From positions 124,001-188,000 of the IMG/VR virus record IMGVR_UViG_3300021959_006010: 64,000 nucleotides of DNA. The stretch is one strand, 5' to 3'. The first letter of the stretch is position 1. The number at the start of each line of letters is the position of its first letter. Positions 4,495 to 35,245 of the stretch are shown piece by piece. The notes beneath the pieces were generated by a model. That model was given only the letters and a program-made list of their open reading frames with translations, had not been told where the DNA came from and did not search any database. The position numbers and the translations under genes are program-made.

Positions 4495-4606
4495 AGACTT
4501 TACCCTCTACTTTAACTGCTAATTTTGTTCCACGATTTGTAACAACAGTGACTTTGTTGCCACTGTTGTTTGTTGAAACCGTTTTTTCTTCCGATTTTTT
4601 CGTCAT
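4475..4606 (-). CDS. Small basic hypothetical protein (43 aa)
   Basis: Hand translation MTKKSEEKTVSTNNSGNKVTVVTNRGTKLAVKVEGKVYGKTNN; TAATG stop/start coupling to the upstream gene. Confidence 0.45.
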   Translation of the reverse strand: MTKKSEEKTVSTNNSGNKVTVVTNRGTKLAVKVEGKVYGKTNN

Positions 4607-10600: not shown

Positions 10601-12519
10601 TCAACATAACCTGCACCACCGTTTGTAATGTTAACTCTAAATCTTTTCCCGTCAACTTCTTTTGGTCTAGAAAAAACGCCGTTCTCAACAATATCTAATA
10701 CAATATTAAAATTATCTTCAACGCTATCTTCGTCTTGCTGATCCGGTAACACTCCTGCATTTAATGCATCAAACTGTTGTGTGTAAATTGTTTGGTTAAC
10801 TGCTCCAGTTCTTGAATCAAAGTAAGGATCATTTGTATCATTTCTTAAAATATAATCCGTAATTAATTTTGCACGATCAACCGCAGCCAAGTATTCATAT
10901 TTCGATAATCCTTTTTCGTTATTAATTTTTAGATCTGAGTAGTAATAAACACCCGCTTGTATTGAAAGAGTATTAGCACGAATCCCTGCTACATGATCTA
11001 ATATAACACTTTTAATAACATTTGATAAATGGTCTTCTAAAGTTTTTACATCATAGAAATAGCCAGTCCAGTCAACTTGGGTTCCTCTTACGAGTGTTGT
11101 TTCTTGATTTGTAACATTATAGTCGATCCATGCAACAGTTTCTGCAACAATAAAATCGAGGTTATTGTTTACAAGTGTTTGTGCAACTAAATCATCTGCA
11201 ACAGGACTATCAATACCTGCACCTGCAACTACACTGTTAGATTCAACTCCTTGGTCAGTCCAAGTAATTGTTTGCATATAAGGACCTGGCTCAAACTTAC
11301 TTGCAATTTGTATTTCTTCTGCTTTACGTGCAGCAGCACCAACTGTTTTGAATGCATAACTTAGACTTCTTCCTTCGCTACCTGGGGGAGTAAATTCTTG
11401 GGTATCAGAACCTGTTGTACTTACAAATATATTAGTTGTACTTGAACGGCTTGCTTGGTCTACATAGTATTTTGTAACTGCTTGTAAATCTGTCGGACCG
11501 TTCGGAGTTCCTTGTCCTGCAAGATCTCCTGGATGGTCGTATAGGTATAGCGGACCCTCCATATCGTCACCTTGTCTGCGTACAACACTTTCTCTCGGAA
11601 GTGCTTCATTTTGCAGCCAGTTTCCGTAAAGTGCATCATTATAGTCATTATCAACAATAGTTTGTACACCAGATCCGCCTGACGGTCTTAAACGTACTGC
11701 ATCACGAAGTGCTTCTGTATCAGCTGTTGCATCTTGATATGTTGCGTATAGTTCAAGTTCGTCTACATTACGTACTCTTAAATAATAAGTGTTTCCACTT
11801 GTTAGTCCTGTAGCATCAGTACTACCGCTTTCATATGTCCATGCACTGCCGTTTATACTAGCATCTAATCCGTGTGCTGGAATTTCTAGATATCCTGTAG
11901 ATGTTGTATATCCGTTTATAGTAAGAGTATATTCAGAAGCGTCAGCTGGTTCAGGACGCATTCTTGCTCTATTACCCGGTGCTTGTCTTTTAATATAGTT
12001 TTCGTCAGCGTATTTTTTATCAATAACTAAGTCATCTATTGTAATATTAGGCTCATGTATAATATTGTAATCCGTAACAGCTTGCTCATTTACACTAACT
12101 CTACCAATTGCGTTATTATTAGCGTTTAACGGACCTGACAATTCCGGTGTTTGGTCTTCTGAAATTGCAATTTCTCCGATCGAAAGAATAATTTTTCCTT
12201 CTTCGGTCACATCAATATCAATAGTGTCTACAGTTTCTGGTGTTGCACCTGCTGCTTCTGTATTAGATACTATTTTTCTAATCTCAATACCTGTTCCATC
12301 TTGTTTAACAATTGGAATGTATGCAGCTAGATTGTTTCCGACATAAGCATCATAACTATCAGGTGTGTCACCTAAACTAGTAAATGTAATCTGTCCGCCT
12401 AAACCTACAACAGCATAAATCTCACGGAAGTTTTCATTTGTTTTACGAAAACTTTCGCGGACGCTATCACCTGTGCCGTCGTTACCCTCTACACCTATGT
12501 CAATAATTTGTCTTGCCAT
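4606..12519 (-). CDS. Giant baseplate/tail-fibre protein: gp9/gp10-like N-term, pectin-lyase-like beta-helix, C-terminal peptidase-G2-type autocleaving chaperone
   Basis: 2637 aa; N-term MARQIIDIGVEGNDGTGDSVRESFRKTNENF; IRIETGIYYEDYPIRVPGNTSIKGDEFRRVIIRP; C-term QYADLAENY...VALKGRVPCKVIG. Confidence 0.75.
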   Translation of the reverse strand: MARQIIDIGVEGNDGTGDSVRESFRKTNENFREIYAVVGLGGQITFTSLGDTPDSYDAYVGNNLAAYIPIVKQDGTGIEIRKIVSNTEAAGATPETVDTIDIDVTEEGKIILSIGEIAISEDQTPELSGPLNANNNAIGRVSVNEQAVTDYNIIHEPNITIDDLVIDKKYADENYIKRQAPGNRARMRPEPADASEYTLTINGYTTSTGYLEIPAHGLDASINGSAWTYESGSTDATGLTSGNTYYLRVRNVDELELYATYQDATADTEALRDAVRLRPSGGSGVQTIVDNDYNDALYGNWLQNEALPRESVVRRQGDDMEGPLYLYDHPGDLAGQGTPNGPTDLQAVTKYYVDQASRSSTTNIFVSTTGSDTQEFTPPGSEGRSLSYAFKTVGAAARKAEEIQIASKFEPGPYMQTITWTDQGVESNSVVAGAGIDSPVADDLVAQTLVNNNLDFIVAETVAWIDYNVTNQETTLVRGTQVDWTGYFYDVKTLEDHLSNVIKSVILDHVAGIRANTLSIQAGVYYYSDLKINNEKGLSKYEYLAAVDRAKLITDYILRNDTNDPYFDSRTGAVNQTIYTQQFDALNAGVLPDQQDEDSVEDNFNIVLDIVENGVFSRPKEVDGKRFRVNITNGGAGYVDQGNPTNSDLRVGKVVVGKSSRAIGRITRYDYEADTATTTPTNNDSLYLNLLRPIEFVDGEELEFGNLVKEDQTTIRIETGIYYEDYPIRVPGNTSIKGDEFRRVIIRPKNRPSLSPWANVYFYRDREFDGLTGDGATSATGYADTNLPTGGTEYYDPLLNLTPGVDDPTGYFGRHYLIDPTRDINIDNNGQLTVTNAGEYENTARLLEKNRAFLQAEIIAWIDDNILNNVGIWNGFTYDSAKCSRDVGFIVDAIVADLREGGRSNSLAAQGSYYAGAVNGQEAQTSAAIQQLNAYVLDIVDNTAITSLSSLTQYVNTNIVKETGVNSPINELFALMLFAFDPDFNPARNNTQLDAFMMNDATILRNMTVQGHGGFMCVLDPEGQILTKSPYIQTGSSFSQTINRQAFRGGMLVDAFCGNTPLTITNVIDSFTLEVEGAPNSGLFIRKPQVPAPFYINGSRYQVNDIVDYDPKDGILSPTATLILDSTSGPDDQNGNPVGYSSVDYPVPYDVTLQTAGNRSQLGNDFTQINDLGYGLLVMNGGLSEMVSMFTYYCHAAYYSYNGSQIRSVAGSNANGNFGLVAEGADPNEVPDAVTLENDMVQAAKAFSVDGIVTTTGIVNATAGDAVTQPTSDFSADIAFTTSGRKVYLNNVSGTLNLAEELEFAATGQGPDSIPLSIQTGFTNEFEQLSLHFYDTEFVPTNKGELDLVHNIQGADRIGRYEVANISKITGVLVDGYTIDDTVYTTTSPGGINAEFVIEKSQQNGYTLSITGGGSGWLGTEQIVVDGTELGGSTSTHDATITITGVNTDPELGAVGAITSATISGTINQTAITPVKSGQVYRANFSTGNSGFSNDGLLAAIVQDEPLNIRSNQNFILTGAENPGNLTIRPSTAVNFAEDPNYTYRSISFGSADAAGNDLAFGSVYTAFDATYDYVRLLVSGTYASQTANLPASVTGTSMGGTIGDDQIAISTLTEEKDRNRLNNNSLTPVGGRPADYTNQLPMVMTWAGKKHYVYNYREVSDAATGAETYSYNSDAHPYALVDIAEVPNSDLTSAGVTGLNSPVDLTGESVVLRAGLQDGAPATITINISTCRATGHDFLDIGTGSFNETNYPNVILGFPAKNADQDAEVQERNKGRVFYVSTDQDGFFRVGRFFTVDQGTGTVTFSASIALSDVDGIGFKRGVVVTEFSTDSEMSDNAIDTVPVESAVRAYVNRRLGYDHSGIPVSNPIGPRVIVQNGSVPMTGNLDMDGNYITDLANIDLNSDPQVAVNKAYVDSRSDAFNKFSLLRDVSVYNGAENQLLAMSGAKIIIIDALSISGGDFEIGAILRNQAGTVDFGTVVGVYARTDSVLGDVVEIAFTPTVNYTGITVNASVYTNIGVSGTVEDGIYDEIINADEDASSDIGITIVRTDNDNSDDPNVDPDVPTATIDLQINPEVIVNADVSPTAGILQSKLDMQEADTYDPQNDTLPVGGDDDATVQATLGLAKFDGDIFSVARGWTTIADNGISLSKLQTIASDSVLGNSTANTANVAQVSFGTVVDEGGGILHTDISGSNNGAVVRTGSETYDIELITTTGTADSLVKTEANGEVTVNSLALGQNNDYTVLQLDGTGGTRLKITTPVEGVVLTAQGGSSTINPDVYIPGNLNIGGLTDPDGADAGTDPDVFDTSILQDNSTSFSESSWVASNWAYHGFIEAPGEKEAASAGIAIGAGSGKAGTGEVAIVVANSGNSTSPVVATFKSTGIEPDTDSAYDIGTNSLRYNEIFVDTVDTADIVNRNGSFTTTVQFAGATVSNKVIEFKDESGTVALLSDVTSSSNGLTRTLQQVTNAGNTTDNDILPSSTADNVNLGSSSSVFNTVYATTFEGTATQAQYADLAENYLGDADYDAGTVLVLGGDAEVTVTNTKGDHRVAGIVTTNPAHLMNSALEGDHVVGVALKGRVPCKVIGKVQKGDMLVTSAVPGYACVNNTPGVGTVIGKAISTKDDTDKGVVEVLVGRT

Positions 12520-16573: not shown

Positions 16574-19500
16574 ATGGCAACAGAAGCTGTATGGTATGAT
16601 ATTTTCAGAAACTTAACACTCAAAGTAAAATCAGATGGTAGTACAATTGATACTATCGTAGCTGACGAGTACAAGGACACACTTACAATTAACCAAGGAC
16701 TTGGCGTAGCATTTAATCCAAGTGCTGCTGGAGACGAGTTTGACATTGATGTAGATTATCAATTATATGTGCCTGTTGGAACTACAACTGTAAGATTACA
16801 AGATGTAAATTCAAACACAAGAGATGTAAAATTAACACCTGGTTCTGGTGTTTTTATTAGCAGACTTGCAGATGATGAGCTTGCATTTACAAGTTACGGT
16901 GTTGCTGAAAATGATAATCTACACACTGTAACCAAAAGAGGTGCAATTACTACTAATAAACTAATTATAAATGATTTAGAAATTGGTGATATTACAAGTA
17001 CTCCTGGTGTTGACGGATTTTCAGTTCTAGGTGTCGAATTTCAAGGCGACGGTACTTTAGATAACCCGGCTAGACTGTTGCCAGCATATGTAGGTATTAC
17101 TGATCCTACATATACAAAAACATACGAATTTAGCGTAGGTGCAGCAGGTATATTTGGTTACTCTGCTAGCTATCTACCTCCATTAAACTTAACAACAGGT
17201 AGTATTGTTCTTGAAAGAGAAGATCCACTAAATCCAGGAGTTTGGGCTCCTATTGCGCAACAGTCAGGTACAACAGCAGGTGTTACATATCAGCTTTCAA
17301 ATACATATGCAGAAAGTTACACCGGCGGAACTGTTAATTACAGAATTACTGTTAGCTGGACTGGTAACACTAGCCAAGTAAGAGTAGATTTAAATTTAAC
17401 TTACGAAGTTTACGATGTAGCAACTAACGTTTTACTTGAAACTGATACTGCAAACAACAGAGTGTTTTTAAGCGGCAATGTTGGTATAGACGAAGCTAAC
17501 CCTCTTGTTAGTTTAGTAATAAACAGAACAGATGCAATTGCATTACCTAAAGGTATTACAGCCGAACAGCCAACTGGCGCAGACGGATATATTAGATATA
17601 ATACACAAACTAACAAATTTGAAGGATTTTCAAATGGGTTCTGGAACGAATTAGGAAGTGTAAGTGACGTCGACTTAGACACCTACATTACAGCAGAACT
17701 AAATCCCGGAACTGACGATGATACTTTGTATTTTTACAATGCATTTGCAAATAGTTTATCGTTGTCATCAACATTATTAGATGTAAAAAATGATGTTTTA
17801 GTTAGAATTAACAATACAACAGATAGCACTAATTCAACAACAGGTGCTCTTATTGTTGACGGTGGTGCATCTATTAAGAAAAACTTAACGGTTGGATCTA
17901 GTAATACAAATACTGTTACATTTAATAGCAGAGTTGCTAGCTCTTTTGTTCCCGAAGTTACAGCAACACATGCACTTGGCGAAGATGCACTTCGTTGGAG
18001 TGAGCTATTTGTTAGTGATGCAGTAAATGTTAATGATTATACACTTCCACTAGCAGACGGTACTGTAAACCAAATTGTACAAACTGATGCACAAGGACAG
18101 TTATTCTTCGGTGATGCAGACACGTTTGGTGGTAACAGAGTTTATGTAAGTGCTGCAAAAGGTGACGATGCAAACGATGGTATAACTGCTCCAGTCGCAA
18201 CTATTGCACGAGCAGCAAGAATCGCTGCTGATCTAGCATACTCTCCAGAAACAACTGATCCAACAACTGAATCAGAAACTGCTGCACTAAGAGCAGCAGC
18301 ACAGTCTATTGCAGACGATACTATTACATATGTTAATACAACATATCCAACACTAATTTATGACCAAGCAAAGTGTAACAGAGATGTTAAAGAAATTATC
18401 GACAGTGCTATTTACGATTTACGCTTTGGCGGCAACAGCCGTTCAGTAGCAGCAGGTGAGTATTACTATGACGGTACTGGTACATTATATATTACTGGTC
18501 AAGTATCAGAAACTATAGATGCTATTAATTATGCTAAAAGCCTTGCAATAACATACTTAACAGGTACTAGAGCTACTGCAATTGGCGCAAGTTTTGATAC
18601 TGTAACAAGTATTATTACAAGTTTAGGTAACGCACCTGCAAAAACATACGGTGATTTTATTACTAACCAAATTACCATTATGGTTGCATCAGGCGATTAT
18701 GTTGAACAAAACCCGATCTTATTAGGTGATGATATTTCGATTGTAGGTGATAACTTACGTAGAACAGTTATCCGTCCAGCGAACGAAAATTTAGATATGT
18801 TCCGTGTAAGAAACAGTTCTTACATTACAGGCGTAGTTTTCCGTGACGGATTAGTAAACAGAATACCAGATTATACATTCCGCTATGCTATTAGTTTTGA
18901 TAATGTGGTAGACACTGCTACCAGCAGGGCAGGATATGTAAATCTTCCAGTTAGCCGTCCTAGGATTTTTACATCACCATACATTCAAAACTGTTCTGTG
19001 ATTTCGTTCTTAGGCGGTAACGGGGTTGAAATAGACGGTAACTTAATTGATACACCAAACATTCCAAACAGTGATATTGAAGCAGAGAATCCTATTGATT
19101 TAGCAGACGGTGTACCTGAACAAGGTAAGTCAATGGTTGCTAACGCATTTACTATTCTATCGTTTGGTGGTGTTGCGTGGCGTGTAATGAACGAAGCATA
19201 TGCACAGATTGTTAGCTGCTTCGTAATCTTTACTGGCAACGGCTGTATTGCACAAAATGGTGGTTATCTATCTATTACAAACTCGGCGTCAAACTTTGGA
19301 TTGTTTGCTCTTAGAGCAAGTGGTTATAGTCCAAATGCATTTGAGTTTGACCGAGGTATTATCAGCGGCAACGGTATATACGAAGTATATCAAACTCTTA
19401 AATTTGTAGGTTTACAACGTGCTCCATTGGAACACTTTATTGTTAGAGTTAGAAACAATTCTAACATTGATATTACTGATAACTTTAATAACAATAGTAC

Positions 19501-22500
19501 TTTTGGTAATACTGCAAGTGTTGTTCCGACAATTAGCAATGTAAGCGGTAATACTATTACTTTTGCTTCAGCACACGGTTTCCAATCAGGCGAAGAAGTT
19601 GAATATAATTCAAACGGCAATGTAGAAATTGTAGGTCTACTAAACGAAATGACTTACTTTGTAAGTGTTCCAAACACTACTCAAATACAAATTTTTAATG
19701 ATGCCGATTTTACTAAACCAGTAGTAGATTTAGATGCATCGCCTACAAGTGGTACACACGAGTTTAAGTCAGGGTATGAAGAATTTTATGTAACTGAAGT
19801 CGTTAGTTCGCATAATATCTACCAAACACTTACAATACCTGCCGGAACTTACACAATCACACCAGGTGATACTATCCAAGCAACTGATGGCGCTGATACA
19901 ATTAGTGCAACTATTTACAGCTACGACTCAGGTACTAACGAGCTAGTAGTAAGTGTTGAACTTGTACAAAGTGGACAAACAACAGTAAGAAATGAGTTTA
20001 CAACTAACAGTGTTATTGATGCAGGCGAAATAGCAGGCGGTACAGTAAATGTTCTTGGCGTAGCAAACAGAAGAGATTTGTATAGTTCAGAAGTTGCTAT
20101 TATTAGTACAGAAAACAGACCAATGCAAACTATCGGTAGTACTGCGTTTAATCAAATTTACTTACATAGACCTTCGATTGTTAACAGTTCTGCACACACA
20201 TGGGAATATGCAGGTTCAGGTACAGACTATAATGCTCTACCACAGAACGGCGGACAAACAGTTGAGTACTTTGAACAAGTAAGTACACTTCCGGGTCGTG
20301 TTTATACATCAGGTACTAACGAACTTGGCGACTTTAAAGTTGGTGATTTTGTTAGAGCGTTTAACAGAACAGGCAACATTAACTTTAAAAACAAAGTTAG
20401 TATTGGTGAGCTTGACTCACTTGCATTAAGTCTAAGTTCTGGTGTTGTAGTTGACGAAATTTCAACTGATATTGATTTAGGTGACAACGAAATTGGCGGA
20501 CCGCAGCATAGTAGACTTGTTACTCAGCTAGCTGCAAGAAGCTTTATTGACAACAGACTTGGTAACTTTATCGACCAAAACTTGTCAACCAATGCTGTGC
20601 CAAATGCTGTTGTTCAATTAAACGGACAAGGTCAAATTAATGCGGAACTTATTCCTCCGTCAAGTGGTACAAGTGCATTTAGACTAGACGAATATAATGC
20701 ACGTTTAGAACTCCACGAAGATATTCCAAGCAACGATCTAAAATCAGGCGACATTGTAATTGAAGAATATCAAGAGACAGTTATTAACTTAACTGGTAAT
20801 GTTACTGTTGTTGCAGGCGAAACTGTAACACAAGCAAATAGCGCCGCAACTGGTACTGTTAAAACAAGTGTAACAAATGGTTCTACTATTAGAGTAATTG
20901 CTCCATTTAGTGGTACATTTAATCTAACAGACGAACTTACAGGGTCAACTAGTGGAGCATTAGGTGCTAATAGTGTCCCAACTGTTGTAAGCGGACCTAA
21001 CGATGTAACAGACAACTATTTCTTAGCAACTGCAAATGCAAGTCAGTTCTTAGTATTAGATCCAGCTGACACATATGACTTTACTGATATAATTGCAAAC
21101 TCAACACCTGTTACAGGAGCACTAACAGGCGCAACAGGTACTGCTACAGAACACAGAACAGGTGTTGTTACAAGTGTTGATGTAAATAACTTACTTGCAG
21201 GTTCAGGATATTTAACCCCTGGTGCATACAATGACGTAGCTCTTACAAGTGTTACAGGCACAGGTACAGGCGCTCTAGCAGATATTGTTGTAAATGGCGC
21301 AGGTCAGGTTGACAGTATTGATATTACATTTGGCGGTAGTGGTTATGCTGTAGGAGACGAACTAAGTGCAGCCGATAACGACATAGGTGGCCAAGGCGGT
21401 GGCGGCACTGACTTTAGTGTAGATGTATTAAGCATTGAAAATAGATTGTATATTGATCTAGAACCTACTATTGGTATACAGTTTAATGCATCTGATATTA
21501 ATGTAGAATTTACAGTTGACGATAATGCTACTGATTTTACTATTAACCAAACTGCAGAAACAAACTTCGGATTTGATGCTGCTGATGTTGGAGTTGGAGG
21601 CGATGTAACTTACTCAAACAGTAGAATTACACTAACAGCACACGGCATGGCAGACGGTGATCCTGTACGTTATGATTCCGGCGCCAATCCAACAATAGGA
21701 AGTTTAACAAACGGCGATACATATTTTGTTAAAGTTATTGACGCAGACACTATCGAACTTTATACTAATTACGGCTTAAACAGCAAAGTTACATTTATTA
21801 GTTCAAGCACAGGGTCGCATCAATTAAAAATTGATTTTGTTAACTTAACTGACGAATTTTTCTATGCTCCTGCACACGGACTAACAGCAGGACAAGCAAT
21901 TCAATTTAATGCTACAACACCTGTAGTAGGTATTACAGACGGCGATTATCTGTTTGCAGGTAGTATTACTACAAATGCATTTACATTACACAGTGCAAGA
22001 GGTAGCGCATTAGATAGTGTAAACGGTATTACTGTAAATCCAGTAAATTTAACTGCTGACGGTAGTGGTAATGCAACAATTACTATTCAAAATGTTGAGA
22101 TAGTAGGCGAAGTTAACACTAGCGGAAAAGAAGAAAGCAGCTGGAGTAATCTAAGTGCGACAACAATCGATGCTGAAGATATTGTAAGTGGTATTGTTAG
22201 CACATCAAGATTGGCAACAGGTAGTGCAAATAACTTAACAGTCCTACGAGGAGACTCGACTTGGAGTTTTGCTGTACAAGGTATGGTTCCAGAGTTTCCT
22301 GTTACACTAACAGGTCAATCTTATAATGATGGTGTTAAAGATGTTTACTACAACGAAGTAGAAGTAAGTGTAGAACTAGCAAACTATGATAATCCTGTTG
22401 CACCAAGTGCAGGAACAGAAACTGTAGGTGTTGCAGCATTTGATTTTAACCACTTTAACATTGACGCAAATGGACTAGTAACAACTAAAACACCTGCTAA

Positions 22501-24970
22501 CGGCGGCGTGATTGATGCTGACAAACTAGACGGTCAACAAGGAAGTTACTATCTAAATCCAGTCAATTTGTCAAGAGCTGTTCCTATAGAAAACGGTGGT
22601 ACAAATTTAAGCAGTTATACACAAGGCGATCTACTATATGCAGCAACTAACATAGGTACTGGATCATTTACCGAAACCCTAAGTACACTAGCAATAGGTG
22701 CTGCAAATAGTGTACTACAAAGCAACGGAACAGTACCTACTTGGACTGATACACTAACACTTGCAGACTTAACTGTAGGCAACATTCAAGTTGCTGTAAC
22801 AGGTGACAACGAAATTGATACAACTAGTGGTAACTTAACACTTGATTCAGCTGGCGGTACTGTTGAGATTGATGATAACCTTACTGTTGCTGGAAACTTA
22901 ACAGTTAATGGTACAACAACGACTGTTAATAGTACAACTGTAACAATAGATGATCCGATCTTTACACTAGGCGGTGACACAGTACCTACTACTGATGATA
23001 ATAAAGACCGCGGTATTGAGTTTAGATGGTATGATACTCCTACAACAACTGCAAAGGTTGGTTTCTTTGGATTTGATGATAGCACTGGCAAATTTACATT
23101 TATTCCAGATGCAACAAACACAAATGAAGTGTTTAGTGGTACAGCAGGCGATGTAGCATTCAACGACGGTGCATTTACTAGTATTACATCAGGCAGCATA
23201 ACTGTTACCGGTGATACATCACTAGAAGGAAATGTTACACTAGGCAATGCAGCAGCAGATAGAATTACATTTACTGGTCAAATTGCTACAGATCTTGTGT
23301 TCCAAGGTGCAACCGATGACACATTTACAACAACATTAGCAATTACAGATCCAACTACACCAAGTAACACAATTACATTCCCAGATGCAAGTGGTACCGT
23401 TGCAGTAAGTGTAACTGATACCACAACAACTACACAAGGTGATTTAAATTTAGACTTTACCTTAAGTGCTGCCGGTAATGTAAGTGCAACAGGCGATGCA
23501 CACGGACTAGCAACAGGTGATAGTCCAACATTCGCTGGTTTAACAATCAATGGCTCAAGTGTAGTATTTGAAGGTGCAACTGCTAACGACTTCGAAACAA
23601 CTCTAACAGTTACAGATCCAACTGCTGACAGAACTATCACGTTCCCAAATGCAGATGGTACAGTAGTTGTAAGTGCTGGTACTAGTGCTACACAAAGCGG
23701 ATTAGATTTATCCATAAGTGCAGCAGGTCAAATCAGTGGTAGTGCCGAAGGACTTGCTGCAACAGATAGTCCAACATTTGCAGGATTGACTATTAACGGT
23801 AATACTATTGTACTCGAAGGTGCAACAGAAGATGCATTTGAGACTACACTTAACGTAGTTGATCCAACAGCAACGAGAACTATTAACATACCAAACAATA
23901 GCGGTACAATGGCTGTTGCTGTAGACAACACTACAACAACTACACAAGGTGATCTAAACGTTACTATGGGTCTAAGTGCTACCGGTGTAGTAACAGCAAG
24001 CGGTGACGCACATGGACTAGCAACAGGTGATAGTCCAACATTTGCCGGATTAACAATTAATGGTTCGAACATAGTATTCGAAGGTGCTACTGCAAATGCA
24101 TTCGAAACATCGTTTGTAATTACAGATCCTACAGCAGACAGAACTATTACTTTCCCAGATAGTAGTGGTACTGTTGCATTTATTAGCGGTAGTGACATTT
24201 TAACTATTAATGCAAACTCAGGTACTAGTACACTACAATCAGGTGACACACTAACTATCACAGGCGGAACATATTTAACTGCTGGTGTATCCGGCGACAC
24301 AGTAACTATAAATCATGATAACACTACTAGAACAGATACAACAAGTACCGATGCTCCGTCACATGGTGGTACCTTTGAAGCAGTTACAAGTGTTACAACA
24401 AATGCAACAGGTCATGTAACAGCTATTGATGTTTCTACTATTACAATACCAGCAGAAGCAGACACATTGAGTAGTGTTCTTGGTAGAGGAAATACTGCTA
24501 ATACAAACATACTTCCTGACTCAACAGCTAACAATCGAAACATCGGTAGTGCAACTGCTATTTGGAATACTGTATACGCTACAACATTTGATGGTACTGC
24601 AACACAAGCACAATACGCTGACTTAGCAGAAAAATATCTAGCAGATGACATCTATGGTCCAGGTACTGTAATAGCAGTTGGCGGCGATGCAGAAGTAACA
24701 GCAGCGCACGACGAAATTGCACACAGCGTACTAGGTGTTGTAAGTACTGCTCCTGCGTTCTTAATGAACAAGGATTTAGTAGATGGCACTGCAATTGCAC
24801 TTAAAGGTCGTGTACCAGTTAAGTGCATAGGTACTGTACGCAAAGGTGACAGACTAGCACCAAGCCACTTTGCAGGTTATGCTACTGTCGACAACAGTCG
24901 TACAGCGTGGAGTTTTGCTATTGCACTTGAAGATGGAGAAGATGGTTTAGTAGAAGCAATTATTCTTTAA
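16574..24970 (+). CDS. Giant tail-fibre/appendage protein: beta-helix, fibre repeats, C-terminal peptidase-G2-type chaperone
   Basis: 2798 aa; IMVASGDYVEQNPILLGDDISIVGDNLRRTVIRP; PYIQNCSVISF; C-term QYADLAEKY...IALKGRVPVKCIG. Confidence 0.75.
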   Translation: MATEAVWYDIFRNLTLKVKSDGSTIDTIVADEYKDTLTINQGLGVAFNPSAAGDEFDIDVDYQLYVPVGTTTVRLQDVNSNTRDVKLTPGSGVFISRLADDELAFTSYGVAENDNLHTVTKRGAITTNKLIINDLEIGDITSTPGVDGFSVLGVEFQGDGTLDNPARLLPAYVGITDPTYTKTYEFSVGAAGIFGYSASYLPPLNLTTGSIVLEREDPLNPGVWAPIAQQSGTTAGVTYQLSNTYAESYTGGTVNYRITVSWTGNTSQVRVDLNLTYEVYDVATNVLLETDTANNRVFLSGNVGIDEANPLVSLVINRTDAIALPKGITAEQPTGADGYIRYNTQTNKFEGFSNGFWNELGSVSDVDLDTYITAELNPGTDDDTLYFYNAFANSLSLSSTLLDVKNDVLVRINNTTDSTNSTTGALIVDGGASIKKNLTVGSSNTNTVTFNSRVASSFVPEVTATHALGEDALRWSELFVSDAVNVNDYTLPLADGTVNQIVQTDAQGQLFFGDADTFGGNRVYVSAAKGDDANDGITAPVATIARAARIAADLAYSPETTDPTTESETAALRAAAQSIADDTITYVNTTYPTLIYDQAKCNRDVKEIIDSAIYDLRFGGNSRSVAAGEYYYDGTGTLYITGQVSETIDAINYAKSLAITYLTGTRATAIGASFDTVTSIITSLGNAPAKTYGDFITNQITIMVASGDYVEQNPILLGDDISIVGDNLRRTVIRPANENLDMFRVRNSSYITGVVFRDGLVNRIPDYTFRYAISFDNVVDTATSRAGYVNLPVSRPRIFTSPYIQNCSVISFLGGNGVEIDGNLIDTPNIPNSDIEAENPIDLADGVPEQGKSMVANAFTILSFGGVAWRVMNEAYAQIVSCFVIFTGNGCIAQNGGYLSITNSASNFGLFALRASGYSPNAFEFDRGIISGNGIYEVYQTLKFVGLQRAPLEHFIVRVRNNSNIDITDNFNNNSTFGNTASVVPTISNVSGNTITFASAHGFQSGEEVEYNSNGNVEIVGLLNEMTYFVSVPNTTQIQIFNDADFTKPVVDLDASPTSGTHEFKSGYEEFYVTEVVSSHNIYQTLTIPAGTYTITPGDTIQATDGADTISATIYSYDSGTNELVVSVELVQSGQTTVRNEFTTNSVIDAGEIAGGTVNVLGVANRRDLYSSEVAIISTENRPMQTIGSTAFNQIYLHRPSIVNSSAHTWEYAGSGTDYNALPQNGGQTVEYFEQVSTLPGRVYTSGTNELGDFKVGDFVRAFNRTGNINFKNKVSIGELDSLALSLSSGVVVDEISTDIDLGDNEIGGPQHSRLVTQLAARSFIDNRLGNFIDQNLSTNAVPNAVVQLNGQGQINAELIPPSSGTSAFRLDEYNARLELHEDIPSNDLKSGDIVIEEYQETVINLTGNVTVVAGETVTQANSAATGTVKTSVTNGSTIRVIAPFSGTFNLTDELTGSTSGALGANSVPTVVSGPNDVTDNYFLATANASQFLVLDPADTYDFTDIIANSTPVTGALTGATGTATEHRTGVVTSVDVNNLLAGSGYLTPGAYNDVALTSVTGTGTGALADIVVNGAGQVDSIDITFGGSGYAVGDELSAADNDIGGQGGGGTDFSVDVLSIENRLYIDLEPTIGIQFNASDINVEFTVDDNATDFTINQTAETNFGFDAADVGVGGDVTYSNSRITLTAHGMADGDPVRYDSGANPTIGSLTNGDTYFVKVIDADTIELYTNYGLNSKVTFISSSTGSHQLKIDFVNLTDEFFYAPAHGLTAGQAIQFNATTPVVGITDGDYLFAGSITTNAFTLHSARGSALDSVNGITVNPVNLTADGSGNATITIQNVEIVGEVNTSGKEESSWSNLSATTIDAEDIVSGIVSTSRLATGSANNLTVLRGDSTWSFAVQGMVPEFPVTLTGQSYNDGVKDVYYNEVEVSVELANYDNPVAPSAGTETVGVAAFDFNHFNIDANGLVTTKTPANGGVIDADKLDGQQGSYYLNPVNLSRAVPIENGGTNLSSYTQGDLLYAATNIGTGSFTETLSTLAIGAANSVLQSNGTVPTWTDTLTLADLTVGNIQVAVTGDNEIDTTSGNLTLDSAGGTVEIDDNLTVAGNLTVNGTTTTVNSTTVTIDDPIFTLGGDTVPTTDDNKDRGIEFRWYDTPTTTAKVGFFGFDDSTGKFTFIPDATNTNEVFSGTAGDVAFNDGAFTSITSGSITVTGDTSLEGNVTLGNAAADRITFTGQIATDLVFQGATDDTFTTTLAITDPTTPSNTITFPDASGTVAVSVTDTTTTTQGDLNLDFTLSAAGNVSATGDAHGLATGDSPTFAGLTINGSSVVFEGATANDFETTLTVTDPTADRTITFPNADGTVVVSAGTSATQSGLDLSISAAGQISGSAEGLAATDSPTFAGLTINGNTIVLEGATEDAFETTLNVVDPTATRTINIPNNSGTMAVAVDNTTTTTQGDLNVTMGLSATGVVTASGDAHGLATGDSPTFAGLTINGSNIVFEGATANAFETSFVITDPTADRTITFPDSSGTVAFISGSDILTINANSGTSTLQSGDTLTITGGTYLTAGVSGDTVTINHDNTTRTDTTSTDAPSHGGTFEAVTSVTTNATGHVTAIDVSTITIPAEADTLSSVLGRGNTANTNILPDSTANNRNIGSATAIWNTVYATTFDGTATQAQYADLAEKYLADDIYGPGTVIAVGGDAEVTAAHDEIAHSVLGVVSTAPAFLMNKDLVDGTAIALKGRVPVKCIGTVRKGDRLAPSHFAGYATVDNSRTAWSFAIALEDGEDGLVEAIIL
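23295..24175 (+). repeat. About 3.5 tandem copies of an ~85 aa unit in the fibre
   Basis: FEGAT..FETTL..TDPTADRTITFP..SGTV...GLAT.DSPTFAGLTING recurs in A-B-A-B order; DNA ggactagcaacaggtgatagtccaacatt repeated. Confidence 0.85.
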
Positions 24971-32562: not shown

Positions 32563-32591
32563 AGTTTAACATCTATTAGCTAGTCTGTCAA
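32563..32591 (-). promoter_or_regulatory. Sigma70-type promoter
   Basis: TTGACA-17-TAAACT. Confidence 0.7.
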
Positions 32592-33715
32592 CTTCTAAAA
32601 ATCAAGTTGTACATATCTTTGTTTACTTCTTCAAACGAAGTTCCGTAAAAGTTATCTAAATCAATTACATATTGTTTAAATTTTTCAACTTGTGCAGGAT
32701 TGTACATGCCAAAGCTATCTTCTAAAATATCTTTTACACTGTCTGTTACTAGTTTGTGTTGTATTAGCCATTGTTTAGCACTATCTTTTAGATTTCTTGC
32801 ATCTAAGAAAGAAGGATAATTTGTAACAACTTGGCTACGGTCAAACTCTTTTAGTCCTAGCGATTCAATATATTTTTCTATCTTTTTACTTTGATTGATA
32901 TTAAACATACTTAAAGTTACACTAATTCCGACATATATAGATTTGTGTTCTATAAAACTTAGAAGACTTTTTAAATTGTTTTCAAATTGATTCCATATAG
33001 AGTGTTGTCTTACATAATCATTAACTTTTCCTATTCCGTCAATACTTACATAGATATGTGTAGTTTTACACTTTTCAAATATTTCTAACCATTGTTCTGT
33101 AAAAGGTTCGTGTAAATTAGTCGGCATTTCTAGATGTATTTTTTCCAATTGTCCTATACTATCTAGATGTTCTAATAATGCTAAATGCTTTTTCTGGTAA
33201 GTAGGTTCTCCGCCCATCAATTTTAAAACTTCAAGAGATGATAAATCTAATGTGCTCCATTCAAAAAACTCTATTCGTTCTGTTCTAATATGTTCGTACT
33301 CGTTAGGTAATTTTACATTGAACCATTTGCTCGAACTCCGTGGCATACACATTCTACAAGCTAAATTACAAGCATTACCTGGAGTGATCTCTAGGAATCT
33401 TAGTTTTTGATCTAAAAAGTCCTTGTTGTCTAATAAATGACGGAACTGTTTTAGTTTATCTAATCTATAACTTGAATGTCTCAACGATTCTGCTTTCCAA
33501 CAAGCACTACATCCTTGTGGTTTTTCTCCTCGAAGAAACTGTTTTTGTAGACCTATATAATCAGTTGAATTTAATAAACCAGACTCGCCAACTGAATCTA
33601 ATGTACCGTTATATCGACAACACGGTTTAATATTATCTGTTTCGATAAGTTTATTATGTCCTGCTAGTGTAGAAGAAATAAATGGCAATACACAAAACGT
33701 ACTTGGTAAAATCAT
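32588..33715 (-). CDS. Radical SAM protein with an N-terminal auxiliary Cys cluster (twitch/SPASM-like)
   Basis: CNLACRMC; FCVLPF...PCC...GCSACW; MGGEP; VSIDG. Confidence 0.85.
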   Translation of the reverse strand: MILPSTFCVLPFISSTLAGHNKLIETDNIKPCCRYNGTLDSVGESGLLNSTDYIGLQKQFLRGEKPQGCSACWKAESLRHSSYRLDKLKQFRHLLDNKDFLDQKLRFLEITPGNACNLACRMCMPRSSSKWFNVKLPNEYEHIRTERIEFFEWSTLDLSSLEVLKLMGGEPTYQKKHLALLEHLDSIGQLEKIHLEMPTNLHEPFTEQWLEIFEKCKTTHIYVSIDGIGKVNDYVRQHSIWNQFENNLKSLLSFIEHKSIYVGISVTLSMFNINQSKKIEKYIESLGLKEFDRSQVVTNYPSFLDARNLKDSAKQWLIQHKLVTDSVKDILEDSFGMYNPAQVEKFKQYVIDLDNFYGTSFEEVNKDMYNLIFRS

Positions 33716-33736: not shown

Positions 33737-33811
33737 TGGAGTGAGCGGCGAGACTCGAACTCGCATGAGACAGATTTGCAATCTGTTGCCTAACCTTTCG
33801 ACCACGCTCAC
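33737..33811 (-). tRNA. trnC: tRNA-Cys(GCA)
   Basis: GTGAGCG/CGCTCAC acceptor stem, U73, CCA encoded, ACAGA-TTGCAAA-TCTGT, GTTCGAG T-loop. Confidence 0.95.
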
Positions 33812-34125
33812 ACTGTATATTCTACTTCTGGTATGCCTATTTTTTCAATTGCGTGTTGGCATACACGACACGGCTTTGCTAATCTAGGATTACCATCTCT
33901 GTCATAGCGTTCGATTACAATCTTTCTGATTGCAGTCCAATCTTTGCATTTACGCAGAGCGTCAATTTCTGCGTGTAGGAAAATTGCATCAGGCTTACCT
34001 GCTTCAACTGCAAACTTACCTTGCAGTGGATGGCTCTTTGTGTAACTGTTTGTACCAACTGCTAACTTGCGTCCTCGCTTGTCATACAGTGTTGCAGTTA
34101 AATTAAATTCGCCTCTGTTTTGCAA
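33808..34125 (-). CDS. Zinc-dependent deaminase (CDA/dCMP/TadA superfamily)
   Basis: HAE...PCRVC; TTG start with AAGGA RBS. Confidence 0.85.
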   Translation of the reverse strand: MQNRGEFNLTATLYDKRGRKLAVGTNSYTKSHPLQGKFAVEAGKPDAIFLHAEIDALRKCKDWTAIRKIVIERYDRDGNPRLAKPCRVCQHAIEKIGIPEVEYTV

Positions 34126-34144
34126 TAGTCCTATCCTTTAAAAC

Positions 34145-34222
34145 TGGTCGGGGATGCAGGATTCGAACCTGCGGCTTTTCCGCCCCAAACGGAACACTCT
34201 GACCAAACTGAGCTAATCCCCG
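34145..34222 (-). tRNA. trnP: tRNA-Pro(UGG)
   Basis: CGGGGAT acceptor stem, TTCCG-TTTGGGG-CGGAA, CCA encoded. Confidence 0.95.
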
Positions 34223-34296
34223 TGGCATAGGTGGAGGGAGTCGAACCCCCATTAACGGTTTTGGAGACCGCTGTGTTGCCATTACACCACACCCAT
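34223..34296 (-). tRNA. trnW: tRNA-Trp(CCA)
   Basis: GCGGT-CTCCAAA-ACCGT, G73, CCA encoded. Confidence 0.95.
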
Positions 34297-34332
34297 AAAA
34301 AAAGCCCCTAACATTATTAGTGCTAGGGGCTT
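34297..34332 (-). terminator. Intrinsic terminator immediately upstream of tRNA-Trp (attenuator terminator)
   Basis: GCCCCTAGCA-ctaataa-TGTTAGGGGC followed by T7. Confidence 0.88.
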
Positions 34333-34354
34333 GTCAACGTAATAAAAAGTCACG

Positions 34355-34417
34355 TCAAGACATACCCCTGCATCCTGGAGGCCAACAAGTAATGTTTGTT
34401 GTGTTAGTCTTGAACAT
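34355..34417 (-). CDS. Putative attenuator leader peptide MFKTNTTNITCWPPGCRGMS
   Basis: AAAGGA RBS 7 nt before ATG; consecutive TGT TGG CCT CCA codons; last codons overlap the antiterminator arm. Confidence 0.75.
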   Translation of the reverse strand: MFKTNTTNITCWPPGCRGMS

Positions 34418-34446
34418 GTATCTATCCTTTCATTTAGTATGCGTAT

Positions 34447-34475
34447 ACTATAACTTATTTATCTCTGTGTGTCAA
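34447..34475 (-). promoter_or_regulatory. Sigma70 promoter, with embedded ATAAATA, driving the leader and tRNA-Trp/Pro/Cys cassette
   Basis: TTGACA-17-TATAGT; ATAAATA at 34456-34462 within the spacer. Confidence 0.85.
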
Positions 34476-34645
34476 CCGTTTTTTGAATTATTTTCTTCTA
34501 TTTTACATCCGGCTTTAATACCACAATGTGGACAACTAAACTGATACCTATCAATTTTCATTTTTTCCATTGTAGCATATGTAAACCAGTTCTTGCAATT
34601 TCCGCAAGTTAGATGCCAAATAGTTTCTTTTACTGCTTTGAACAT
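34472..34645 (-). CDS. Small zinc-ribbon protein (57 aa)
   Basis: Hand translation MFKAVKETIWHLTCGNCKNWFTYATMEKMKIDRYQFSCPHCGIKAGCK...; two CxxC. Confidence 0.65.
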   Translation of the reverse strand: MFKAVKETIWHLTCGNCKNWFTYATMEKMKIDRYQFSCPHCGIKAGCKIEENNSKNG

Positions 34646-34661
34646 AGTTTACTTTCTTTTA

Positions 34662-34737
34662 TGGTGCCGGTGCACGGACTCGAACCGCGGACCTACTGAT
34701 TACAAATCAGTTGCTCTACCAGCTGAGCTACACCGGC
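34662..34737 (-). tRNA. trnT: tRNA-Thr(UGU)
   Basis: GCCGGTG acceptor stem, ACTGA-TTTGTAA-TCAGT, CCA encoded. Confidence 0.95.
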
Positions 34738-34743
34738 TAAAGT

Positions 34744-34905
34744 TTATTCTGTTACTTCCTCTACAGGTGCAACATAACCTCTTTTATTTAGTTCCGCAAC
34801 TGCTTTGCTTTTGTGTTTACGGTTGTTATTATCTTGCGATGCACGTACTAGAGCTTCGTTGCTCATTGTGCTTACTTTTACTTCGTTAATCTTTGGCGAT
34901 GCCAT
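34744..34905 (-). CDS. Small hypothetical protein (53 aa)
   Basis: MASPKINEVKVSTMSNEALVRASQDNNNRKHKSKAVAELIKRGY...; GAGGA RBS. Confidence 0.6.
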   Translation of the reverse strand: MASPKINEVKVSTMSNEALVRASQDNNNRKHKSKAVAELNKRGYVAPVEEVTE

Positions 34906-34928
34906 AAGTATTTCCTCGTTAAGTTATT

Positions 34929-35003
<75 letters not shown>

Positions 35004-35009
35004 ATTGTA

Positions 35010-35100
35010 TGGCGGAAACGGAGGGATTCGAACCCTCGGTACGCTTATCACGTACGGCTCCTTAGCAGGGAGCTGGTTTCAGCCACTCACCCACGTTTCC
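35010..35100 (-). tRNA. trnS: tRNA-Ser(GCU)
   Basis: GCTCC-CTGCTAA-GGAGC, long variable arm, CCA encoded. Confidence 0.95.
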
Positions 35101-35169
35101 TATAAAACATATCCCCGCTTTATCAGATACGTTGCATCAGCTATACTGTATGCAGGATATGTTTTAACT

Positions 35170-35245
35170 TGGCTCCCCGAGCTGGACTCGAACCAGCGAC
35201 ATACGGATTAACAGTCCGGTGTTCTACCAACTGAACTATCAGGGA
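35170..35245 (-). tRNA. trnN: tRNA-Asn(GUU)
   Basis: TCCCTGA acceptor stem, CGGA-CTGTTAA-TCCG, CCA encoded. Confidence 0.95.

What the first reader, a model, noticed from the sequence alone, without database searches (positions are those of the whole stretch)
33808..34125. Deaminase embedded between tRNA-Pro and tRNA-Cys, inside the attenuated transcript
Seen: a 105 aa HAE/PCxxC protein starts 20 nt after tRNA-Pro and its stop overlaps the first bases of tRNA-Cys. Known: this superfamily includes tRNA editors (TadA, CDAT8) and nucleotide deaminases. Inference: co-induction with the tRNAs suggests tRNA editing or a counter-defence role. None of the seven tRNAs has A34, so classical TadA action on them is excluded.
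Basis: partly seen in the sequence, partly recalled or inferred. Interest (0 to 1): 0.6.

Follow-up and report, generated by a model that had tools for sequence, protein, structure and literature searches.

The report
Mini phage deaminase inside tRNA operon
A real, strongly conserved 105-residue zinc deaminase gene fills the gap between two tRNA genes of an uncultured marine jumbo phage. It belongs to a virus-only "core-only" deaminase family that most likely works on cytosine nucleotides rather than editing tRNAs, although its repeated placement in tRNA arrays and its very basic charge are unexplained.

Summary
A 105-aa ORF (33808-34125, minus strand, TTG start) with intact HAE and PCxxC motifs starts 19 nt after tRNA-Pro. 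Its TGA stop is nucleotides 2-4 of tRNA-Cys. It is under strong purifying selection (Ka/Ks 0.05-0.08) and folds confidently (pLDDT 91) into a stripped CDA core lacking helix 1 and everything after strand 4.

It belongs to a virus-only family of ~100-aa proteins found in 196 GenBank phages and hundreds of metagenomic contigs. No experimental study of it turned up.

tRNA linkage does recur: 9 of 40 non-redundant loci lie within 100 nt of a tRNA, in at least four lineages, each next to a different tRNA. But most relatives sit in replication or nucleotide modules of phages, with no tRNA within about 5 kb. The neighbouring tRNA genes show no need for editing, and the nearest named families are dCMP/dCTP/cytidine deaminases, not TadA.

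The best reading (about 0.5) is an unregulated cytosine-nucleotide deaminase co-transcribed with tRNAs. Three facts keep a polynucleotide substrate alive (about 0.3 combined): a canonical dCMP deaminase plus ThyA elsewhere in the genome, a net charge of +6 to +9, and the tRNA enrichment.

The upstream "attenuator" looks like a genuine leader-peptide attenuator rich in Cys, Trp and Pro codons.

The parts
33808..34125 (-). 105-aa minimal CDA-fold deaminase gene (TTG start, TGA stop)
   Evidence: PF00383, 29.9 bits; PHROG 174; AF2 pLDDT 90.9; Ka/Ks 0.05-0.08.
34126..34144 (-). 19-nt spacer between tRNA-Pro and the start codon. It holds an AAGGA Shine-Dalgarno and leaves no room for a promoter.
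   Evidence: Sequence. The same 19-20-nt spacer occurs in L008, L013 and L024.
34145..34222 (-). tRNA-Pro(TGG), immediately upstream
34223..34296 (-). tRNA-Trp(CCA), first gene after the terminator
33737..33811 (-). tRNA-Cys(GCA). Its nucleotide 1 is the last base of the final Val codon, and its nucleotides 2-4 are the ORF's TGA stop.
34302..34332 (-). Intrinsic-terminator hairpin (12-bp stem, T7 tail) ending 5 nt before tRNA-Trp
   Evidence: Conserved in L008, L013 and L024.
34355..34417 (-). 20-codon leader ORF (core Cys-Trp-Pro-Pro-Gly-Cys) with its own Shine-Dalgarno
   Evidence: An alternative antiterminator pairing is predicted.
34447..34475 (-). Sigma-70-like promoter TTGACA-17-TATAGT (11 of 12 matches)
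   Evidence: Both hexamers are conserved in four relatives.
32588..33715 (-). Radical-SAM protein (375 aa) starting 21 nt after tRNA-Cys. It is the next gene on the same strand and part of a variable island between the deaminase and the DNA ligase.
34662..35245 (-). Upstream half of the array: tRNA-Asn, Ser, Gly, a 53-aa ORF and tRNA-Thr. A 57-aa zinc-ribbon ORF follows at 34472-34645.

Best explanation
**What it is.** The gene encodes a zinc-dependent hydrolytic deaminase of a virus-only, roughly 100-residue, core-only branch of the cytidine/deoxycytidylate deaminase superfamily. Its secondary structure is strand 1, strand 2, an inserted helix, the HAE helix, strand 3, the PCxxC helix and strand 4.

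**Most likely job (inferred).** It deaminates a cytosine nucleotide (at the dCMP, dCTP or CMP level) to the uracil form. That would feed thymidylate synthesis for a 37% GC genome, as an unregulated companion to the phage's canonical dCMP deaminase, a type that is allosterically regulated in other organisms.

**How it is expressed (inferred from anatomy).** It is expressed as part of a mixed tRNA-mRNA precursor:
1. A promoter.
2. A Cys/Trp/Pro-rich leader peptide and a terminator.
3. tRNA-Trp, tRNA-Pro, the deaminase and tRNA-Cys.
4. The radical-SAM gene and onward.

tRNA processing would trim the message on both sides. An RNase P cut at tRNA-Cys would remove the stop codon, so the protein can be made properly only from the unprocessed precursor.

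**Why it sits among tRNAs (inferred).** The recurrent placement is best explained by a shared early transcription unit and by cassette exchange at tRNA arrays, not by a tRNA substrate.

**Shown versus inferred.** Shown here: the ORF, the motifs, the fold, purifying selection, the family distribution and the genomic contexts. Inferred: the substrate, co-transcription, processing and the reason for the placement.
For: **Catalytic and family evidence**
- The catalytic set H51, E53, C86 and C89 is invariant. So are N26, Y28, K30, H32 and R73, both in relatives next to a tRNA and in those that are not.
- PHROG 174 (dCMP deaminase) matches at 9e-9.
- Across 31 family members the only NCBIfam matches are ComEB (4), anti-phage dCTP deaminase (4) and cytidine deaminase (2). 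None matches TadA.

**Context in relatives**
- CobT-VWA, MoxR ATPase, deaminase, primase, DnaB.
- RNase H, DUF6433, then the mini-deaminase, whose stop overlaps the start of a canonical dCMP deaminase, in L089.
- DNA ligase next door in L013, L021 and L063, and within 1.4 kb in L033.
- Thymidylate kinase and NrdD next door in Erwinia phage Kaldavass.
- Topoisomerase next door in Cobetia phage Carin-5.

**Thymidylate synthesis**
- In the near-complete genomes G003 and G005 it is the only PF00383 match, and ThyX is present.
- G006 (94% complete) also has ThyX.

**tRNA placement**
- 31 of 40 non-redundant loci have no tRNA within 100 nt, and 23 of 40 have none within about 5 kb.
- L015, L016 and L018 share with the window exactly the ORF (79% DNA identity) and nothing else within 5 kb on either side. 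This is cassette behaviour.
- No conserved protein-coding neighbour exists.
Against: - The genome already has a canonical 141-aa dCMP deaminase (75.7 bits) next to ThyA, about 47 kb away. The same double set occurs in Kaldavass and in two IMG/VR jumbo phages. A second dCMP deaminase therefore looks redundant.
- The protein lacks helix 1 and all elements after strand 4. In dCMP and cytidine deaminases, from general knowledge, these close the pocket and build the oligomer and the allosteric site.
- The family is consistently very basic. Median pI is 9.5-9.8 and net charge is +6 to +9 per ~100 aa, with a conserved YDKRGR hairpin. The genome median pI is 5.5 and the canonical paralogue's is 6.3. 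That is more typical of nucleic-acid binders.
- tRNA adjacency is enriched. It is 9/40 for the deaminase against 35/543 for other ORFs in the same loci, p = 0.0016, and 9/17 against 35/239 within tRNA-bearing loci, p = 5e-4.
- No biochemical datum exists for any member.
Confidence: 0.5

Rival explanations
1. It is a tRNA (or other RNA) base editor. The mini-deaminase is co-expressed with the phage tRNAs and deaminates a C or an A in phage or host tRNAs, to retune decoding or to escape anticodon nucleases.
For: - It is embedded in tRNA arrays in at least four lineages on the tree, next to different tRNAs and with 8-36-nt gaps.
- In the window clade it lies behind a leader-peptide attenuator whose codons match the downstream tRNAs.
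- It coexists with a canonical dCMP deaminase.
- It carries a strong positive charge.
- Relatives carry a tRNA-Ser with anticodon ACT (A34). One lineage has an 84-nt tRNA-Trp with C8.
Against: - No constant partner tRNA exists.
- The seven window tRNAs all have U8, U33, a normal T-loop and fully paired stems.
- Of 97 distinct tRNAs across the loci, 97 have U33, 91 have U8, and none has a mismatch that editing would fix.
- The same invariant residues occur in relatives with no tRNA nearby.
- There is no RNA-binding extension such as the TadA C-terminal helix or the CDAT8 THUMP domain.
- No family member matches a TadA model.
- From general knowledge, inosine at position 34 of tRNA-Ser(ACU) would misread AGA.
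Confidence: 0.15
2. It is a polynucleotide or signal-nucleotide deaminase used for host takeover or counter-defence. It might act on single-stranded or host DNA, or on a cytosine-containing immune signal.
For: - It has a very basic surface and an open, cap-less core.
- Its size is like that of the ~108-residue DNA-deaminase chain matched in PDB entry 9k3e, although the match is weak (Z 5.7).
- Its neighbours are DNA-handling enzymes such as primase, helicase, ligase, RNase H and topoisomerase.
- The family is virus-only.
- It coexists with a canonical dCMP deaminase.
Against: - A free DNA mutator would also hit the phage genome, and no inhibitor or immunity gene is conserved beside it.
- Structural scores to DNA-deaminase toxins (Z 4.2-5.7) are lower than to nucleotide and tRNA deaminases (Z 7-8).
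- No sequence match to toxin deaminase families appears, apart from a co-match of distant members to PF14437.
Confidence: 0.15
3. It is an accessory subunit rather than a stand-alone enzyme. It would pair with the canonical dCMP deaminase, or with another replication-complex protein, as ADAT3 pairs with ADAT2.
For: - The L089 gene overlaps the start codon of a canonical dCMP deaminase.
- The two types co-occur in at least four large phages.
- The truncated core lacks the usual oligomer elements.
Against: - It is the only CDA-fold protein in Carin-5, S-T4, ACG-2014f, a phiKZ-like phage, G003 and G005.
- The catalytic residues are invariant, which is unlike a degenerate scaffold subunit.
- No complex prediction was run.
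Confidence: 0.07

Closest known systems
dCMP deaminase (T4 Cd, cyanophage S-TIM5 dCD, PBCV-1 dCMP/dCTP deaminase, bacterial ComEB)
   Same: It has the HAE and PCxxC zinc site and a long insert between strand 2 and the HAE helix. Best PHROG and NCBIfam matches are to this group. Structural Z is 6.8-7.5. It is phage-encoded and often sits in replication or nucleotide modules. GenBank annotators call it 'dCMP deaminase'.
   Different: It is 30-45% shorter, with no helix 1, no helix 4 and no strand 5, and so none of the usual pocket cap or allosteric site. It has an 8-residue insert before PCxxC and a distinct NSYxK(S/T)HPxQ signature. Its pI is ~9.5. It coexists with a true dCMP deaminase in this genome. 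Activity is untested.
TadA / ADAT2 tRNA adenosine deaminases
   Same: It shares the superfamily and the HAE...PCxxC motif. Structural Z is 7.0-7.3. It is genomically tied to tRNAs. Two source databases even label relatives 'TadA'.
   Different: No A34 tRNA is present in the phage. The C-terminal RNA-binding helices are absent. No TadA model matches any of 31 members. The insert before HAE is about twice as long.
Homotetrameric cytidine deaminase / blasticidin-S deaminase
   Same: These are the smallest known stand-alone CDA enzymes (120-136 aa). They give the best Foldseek E-values, but only 3e-4 with TM ~0.55.
   Different: These enzymes keep helix 1 and a C-terminal strand or tail. The mini protein uses His-Cys-Cys rather than Cys-Cys-Cys zinc ligation and is far more basic.
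CDAT8 (archaeal tRNA C8-to-U8 editor)
   Same: It has a CDA core, with Z 6.5 and the lowest rmsd (1.7 A over 65 residues).
   Different: CDAT8 carries a THUMP RNA-binding domain and serves tRNA genes that encode C8. Here 91 of 97 tRNAs encode U8.
tRNA punctuation of mitochondrial transcripts, and trp-type leader-peptide attenuation
   Same: The ORF exactly fills an inter-tRNA gap, so tRNA processing would define the message ends. A promoter, a short ORF rich in the relevant codons and a terminator precede the unit.
   Different: Both are analogies of mechanism only. Neither processing nor attenuation was measured here. I know of no described attenuator that controls tRNA genes through codons read by those same tRNAs; that statement is from my own knowledge and was not searched exhaustively.

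Membership tests
CDA superfamily (Pfam PF00383, dCMP_cyt_deam_1) | Sequence match above the curated threshold | tested here: met
   29.9 bits against a cut-off of 25, E = 5.5e-7. It is re-found in the genome scan.
CDA superfamily (Pfam PF00383, dCMP_cyt_deam_1) | Zinc and catalytic motif (H/C)AE ... PCxxC | tested here: met
   H51-A52-E53 and P85-C86-x-x-C89 are invariant in 31 and in 53 family members.
CDA superfamily (Pfam PF00383, dCMP_cyt_deam_1) | Three-layer alpha/beta/alpha deaminase fold | tested here: met
   AF2 pLDDT is 90.9. Thirty-two PDB chains score Z >= 5, and nearly all those listed are CDA-superfamily (deaminase-fold) proteins. The core only is present; helix 1 and the post-strand-4 elements are absent.
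dCMP deaminase (ComEB / T4 Cd type) | Match to curated equivalog models | tested here: not met
   No NCBIfam match for the window protein at E <= 1. Only 4 of 31 relatives touch TIGR02571, at E >= 9e-5.
dCMP deaminase (ComEB / T4 Cd type) | Helix 4 and strand 5 C-terminal region, and the dCTP/dTTP allosteric site | tested here: not met
   The model ends at strand 4 (residues 100-103 of 105). Alignments to 4p9c, 2hvv, 2w4l and 1vq2 stop at about residue 114-151 of the targets.
dCMP deaminase (ComEB / T4 Cd type) | Deaminates dCMP to dUMP | not testable with these tools
   This needs an enzyme assay. Indirect support comes from ThyX co-occurrence where it is the only CDA.
TadA (tRNA A34 deaminase) | A tRNA substrate with A34 is available | tested here: not met
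   None of the 10 phage tRNAs has A34. Host tRNAs are unknown.
TadA (tRNA A34 deaminase) | Sequence match to TadA models and a C-terminal RNA-binding helix | tested here: not met
   No TadA model is hit by any of 31 members. No C-terminal helix is present.
CDAT8-type tRNA C-to-U editor | tRNA genes that encode C where U is required, and a THUMP domain | tested here: not met
   All seven window tRNAs have U8 and U33. Of 97 tRNAs, 2 have C8. The protein is a single domain.
Virus-only mini-deaminase family (unnamed; part of PHROG 174) | About 100-110 aa with the NSYxK(S/T)HPxQ and YDKRGR signatures, and viral origin | tested here: met
   Atlas clusters of 103-107 aa are 92-100% Viruses. BFVD top matches have TM 0.85-0.89.

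The most novel reading that the evidence does not exclude
The mini-deaminase is a new kind of phage nucleic-acid deaminase. It would be a highly basic, 100-residue core that acts on tRNA or another polynucleotide. It would be switched on together with phage tRNAs by a leader-peptide attenuator that senses shortage of those same tRNAs, forming a phage module that both resupplies and chemically retunes the translation apparatus.
Probability: 0.12. Interest if true: 0.8.

Novelty: new variant of a known kind. Interest (0 to 1): 0.42.

Why it matters
- **An unassayed, widespread family.** I found no enzyme assay or other experimental study for any member, yet the family is widespread and confined to viruses. 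It occurs in Rak2-, phiKZ- and T4-like cyanophage groups and in many marine phages, and databases label it 'dCMP deaminase' or 'TadA' by guesswork.
- **If it is a nucleotide deaminase.** It would then be the smallest working CDA enzyme known. It would show how far the fold can be stripped.
- **If it acts on RNA or DNA.** It would then be a compact natural editor and a new player in phage-host conflict over tRNAs.
- **The arrangement itself.** This is a clear bacterial-virus example of a protein gene punctuated by tRNAs. It sits behind what looks like a tRNA-supply-sensing attenuator, which deserves its own study.

Tried and rejected
- **PDB by sequence.** Nothing was found.
- **NCBIfam on the window protein.** Nothing was found.
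- **Fold searches.** Foldseek against PDB and VIA-align wide tie all CDA subfamilies at TM ~0.55 and Z 6.5-8. Structure therefore cannot choose between TadA, dCMP deaminase, CDA, guanine deaminase and RibD.
- **Conserved protein neighbour.** A Pfam tally of 56 flanking ORFs from the 40 non-redundant loci found nothing recurrent.
- **Editing footprints in tRNA genes.** None were found. C8 in one 84-nt tRNA-Trp and A34 in tRNA-Ser(ACT) of relatives are isolated cases, not a pattern.
- **TGA recoding through tRNA-Trp C34-to-U editing.** I considered this and dropped it. The window reads cleanly in table 11, including ORFs of 2637 and 2798 aa. No other genetic code was used.
- **Truncated gene remnant.** Rejected, because hundreds of relatives have the same length and selection is strong.
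- **Expression data.** No RNA run holds the phage; only estuary and marine DNA metagenomes do.
- **Literature.** Six searches and two papers gave no functional study.

Full report
**1.

The window is bases 124001-188000 of a 275,366-bp IMG/VR virus record. That record has 37% GC and CheckV completeness of 77%. It is an uncultured jumbo phage seen in estuary and marine DNA metagenomes.

ARAGORN and Rfam agree on seven minus-strand tRNAs between 33737 and 35245. The ORF at 33808-34125 (minus strand) encodes 105 residues from a TTG start, with an AAGGA Shine-Dalgarno 8 nt upstream. Nineteen nucleotides separate it from the 3' end of tRNA-Pro. The TGA stop is nucleotides 2-4 of tRNA-Cys.

The HAE and PCxxC motifs are present. 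Pfam PF00383 is passed at 29.9 bits against a cut-off of 25. Ka/Ks against five relatives is 0.05-0.08. The gene is real, and no tRNA in the genome has A34.

**2. What the protein is.**

With a 31-sequence alignment, AlphaFold gives pLDDT 90.9. The order of elements is strand 1, strand 2, an inserted helix (residues 33-41), the HAE helix, strand 3, the PCxxC helix and strand 4. The usual N-terminal helix and everything after strand 4 are missing.

Foldseek and VIA-align place the model squarely in the CDA superfamily. Every subfamily ties at Z 6.5-8 and TM about 0.55, including guanine deaminase, tetrameric CDA, PBCV-1 and S-TIM5 dCMP deaminases, TadA, yeast cytosine deaminase, RibD and CDAT8. 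Only 65-83 core residues align in these matches.

The family itself is well populated:
- 72 word-search hits of mostly 100-115 aa.
- 410 IMG/VR stretches.
- 196 GenBank phage records, covering Rak2/GAP32/CBB-type jumbo phages, phiKZ-likes, large cyanomyoviruses and Aeromonas phages.
- Atlas clusters that are 92-100% viral.

The family signature is YDKRGR in the strand 1-2 hairpin, then NSYxK(S/T)HPxQ, then LHAE, then an insert RYDxxGNPxLAKPC. N26, Y28, H32, H51, E53, R73, C86 and C89 are invariant across 53 distinct members, and K30 is nearly so.

Weak named-family matches across members are ComEB, anti-phage dCTP deaminase and cytidine deaminase, never TadA. I found no experimental work on any member. 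One paper simply lists the Carin-5 homologue as 'dCMP deaminase' (PMC12686479). The 2011 deaminase-fold classification does not mention any phage-specific clade in the passages checked (PMC3239186).

**3. Is the tRNA linkage more than an accident?**

Partly. Relatives at 80-95% identity are all embedded in tRNA arrays, but between different tRNAs:

| Locus | Arrangement |
|---|---|
| L008, L009 | Pro, gene, Cys |
| L010-L014 | Cys, gene |
| L015, L017 | tRNA-UAU, gene, tRNA-UAU |
| L018 | Met, gene |
| L019 | Thr, gene |

L015, L016 and L018 share with the window exactly the ORF at 79% DNA identity and nothing else within 5 kb on either side. L015, L016, L020 and L023 have a promoter-like TTGACC-N18-TACTAT just upstream of the gene.

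More distant relatives again start 8-36 nt after a tRNA:
- L024: tRNA-UAU, 72% identity.
- L097: Leu, gene, tRNA-UAU, Trp, 69% identity.
- L033: Pro.
- L053: Leu.
- L075 and L080: Ser.
- L037: inside a 12-tRNA array.

On the protein tree the tRNA-adjacent state needs at least four changes.

The counts, clustering at 90% identity, are:

| Comparison | Deaminase | Other ORFs | Fisher p |
|---|---|---|---|
| All non-redundant loci | 9/40 within 100 nt of a tRNA | 35/543 in the same loci | 0.0016 |
| Loci that hold a tRNA | 9/17 | 35/239 | 5e-4 |

In the whole genome only 4 of 329 ORFs touch a tRNA. These numbers ignore shared ancestry, so they overstate independence.

Set against this:
- 23 of the 40 non-redundant loci have no tRNA within about 5 kb.
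- None of the eight named phages inspected has a tRNA within 4-6 kb, except DES1, where a tRNA-Arg lies 380 nt upstream.

**4. What the other contexts say.**

No protein-coding neighbour is conserved, but the themes are replication and nucleotide supply:
- CobT-VWA, MoxR ATPase, gene, primase, DnaB in the large clade without nearby tRNAs.
- RNase H, DUF6433, gene, and then a canonical dCMP deaminase whose start overlaps the mini gene's stop, in L089.
- DNA ligase next door in several lineages, including the window clade.
- Thymidylate kinase and NrdD in Kaldavass.
- Topoisomerase in Carin-5.

In the near-complete genomes G003 and G005 the mini protein is the only PF00383 match and ThyX is present. 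G006 also has ThyX.

On the other hand, the window's genome carries a canonical 141-aa dCMP deaminase beside ThyA, about 47 kb away. So do Kaldavass and two IMG/VR jumbo phages.

**5. Tests of the tRNA-editing idea.**

- All seven window tRNAs have U8, U33, a TTCGA T-loop, an encoded CCA and fully paired stems.
- Among 97 distinct tRNAs in all the loci, U33 is 97/97 and U8 is 91/97. ARAGORN stems show no C-A or A-C mismatch.
- There are exceptions. One is an 84-nt tRNA-Trp with C8 in L010-L014. Another is a tRNA-Ser with anticodon ACT in L011-L013 and L097. They are isolated.
- The flanking tRNA changes from lineage to lineage.
- No RNA-binding extension is present.

Nothing here requires editing, though host tRNAs cannot be examined.

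**6. What does not fit a plain dCMP deaminase.**

- It is redundant with the canonical enzyme in this genome.
- The elements that normally cap the pocket and form the allosteric site are absent.
- The charge is striking. Median pI is 9.5-9.8 and net charge is +6 to +9 per ~100 residues across 53 members, with +17 in one. The genome median pI is 5.5 and the canonical paralogue's is 6.3.
- Conserved basic positions lie in the strand 1-2 hairpin and in the two loops that flank the active site.

This is why I keep about 0.3 in total on a polynucleotide substrate.

**7. How it is expressed (inferred from anatomy).**

On the minus strand there is a near-consensus promoter (34475-34447). It is followed by a Shine-Dalgarno and a 20-codon ORF (34417-34355, peptide MFKTNTTNITCWPPGCRGMS). 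A 12-bp terminator with a T7 tail (34332-34302) then ends 5 nt before tRNA-Trp. No promoter can fit between the terminator and tRNA-Trp, or between tRNA-Pro and the deaminase.

The whole leader is conserved in L008, L013 and L024. The leader peptides keep a Cys-Trp-(Cys/Pro)-Pro core. The L024 peptide adds three ATA codons, and its downstream array is Trp, Cys, tRNA-UAU.

Before the 3' arm of the terminator is made, the G-run at the end of the leader ORF is predicted to pair with the C-run of the terminator's 5' arm. This is the classical logic of ribosome-stalling attenuation. The deaminase would be made mainly when Cys, Trp or Pro decoding is slow.

Because tRNA-Cys starts inside the last sense codon, an RNase P cut would leave a message without a stop codon. 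Only the unprocessed precursor can give normal termination.

**8. Verdict.**

The evidence does not support tRNA editing as the likeliest function. The most economical reading is a virus-specific, core-only cytosine-nucleotide deaminase. It belongs to the replication and nucleotide gene set, and in large marine phages it has become part of tRNA transcription units and travels as a cassette between tRNA arrays.

My confidence in that reading is about 0.5, because no member has been assayed and because of the charge, the truncation and the paralogy. I rate it a new variant of a known kind, of moderate interest. The attenuator beside it is the more surprising object.

**Limits.**
- No expression or editing data exist for this phage.
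- The enrichment statistics are not phylogenetically corrected.
- The gene calling used for the control ORFs was a simple longest-ORF procedure.

Noticed in passing
window 34297-34475 (minus strand): There is a candidate leader-peptide attenuator in front of tRNA-Trp. It consists of a promoter TTGACA-17-TATAGT, a 20-codon ORF with a Cys-Trp-Pro-Pro-Gly-Cys core, and a strong terminator ending 5 nt before the tRNA. It is conserved in L008, L013 and L024. The leader codons track the downstream tRNAs: L024 has three ATA codons and a downstream tRNA-UAU. Rfam has no match.
   Followed up: partly
L015 4845-4935 and 5323-5414; L024 4888-4981; L037 4831-4922; L097 5359-5452: An odd 91-94-nt tRNA with anticodon UAU, a long variable arm (class-II-like) and A73 repeatedly flanks the deaminase in relatives. 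Which amino acid it carries is unclear. From general knowledge, the long arm and A73 are Leu-like while the anticodon reads the Ile codon AUA.
   Followed up: partly
L011/L012/L013 (L013 4130-4219) and L097 4773-4862: tRNA-Ser with anticodon ACT (A34) stands where the window has GCT. From general knowledge, A34 outside tRNA-Arg is rare in bacteria and phages.
   Followed up: no
L013 4818-4901 (also L010-L014): An 84-nt tRNA-Trp(CCA) has C at position 8 and an 11-nt variable region, unlike the window's 74-nt tRNA-Trp with U8.
   Followed up: partly
genome G000 190771-191164 (outside the window); also L016, L044, L054, L080, L089: The phage encodes its own permuted tmRNA (tag ANSNFKPEVFANFDEVAIAA). 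Several relatives carry a tmRNA within a few kb of the mini-deaminase. This is notable because RNase P processing at tRNA-Cys would create a non-stop deaminase message.
   Followed up: no
genome G000 about 110183-111720 (outside the window; L005 1429-2967): A canonical 141-aa dCMP deaminase, an 89-aa ORF and ThyA (288 aa) lie in a row. This is the classical dTMP module, separate from the mini-deaminase.
   Followed up: yes
window 32588-33715 (minus strand): A 375-aa radical-SAM protein starts 21 nt after tRNA-Cys. Divergent radical-SAM genes (26% identity, different PHROGs) occupy the same slot in L008 and L024, while L013 goes straight to the DNA ligase. This is a variable island between the deaminase and the ligase. 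The function is unknown.
   Followed up: partly
window 34472-34645 and 34744-34905 (minus strand): Two small ORFs lie between tRNAs: a 57-aa zinc-ribbon protein with two CxxC pairs, and a 53-aa basic protein. Neither has a family assignment.
   Followed up: partly
window 4606-12519 (minus strand) and 16574-24970 (plus strand): Two giant ORFs of 2637 and 2798 aa face away from each other. I did not examine them.
   Followed up: no
window 33737-35245: All seven tRNA genes encode their 3' CCA. In the related loci 95 of 97 distinct tRNAs do.
   Followed up: yes
P0015: A 91%-identical partial homologue is filed in NCBI under a Flavobacteriaceae metagenome-assembled genome. This is a weak hint at the host group, or a phage contig binned with its host.
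   Followed up: no
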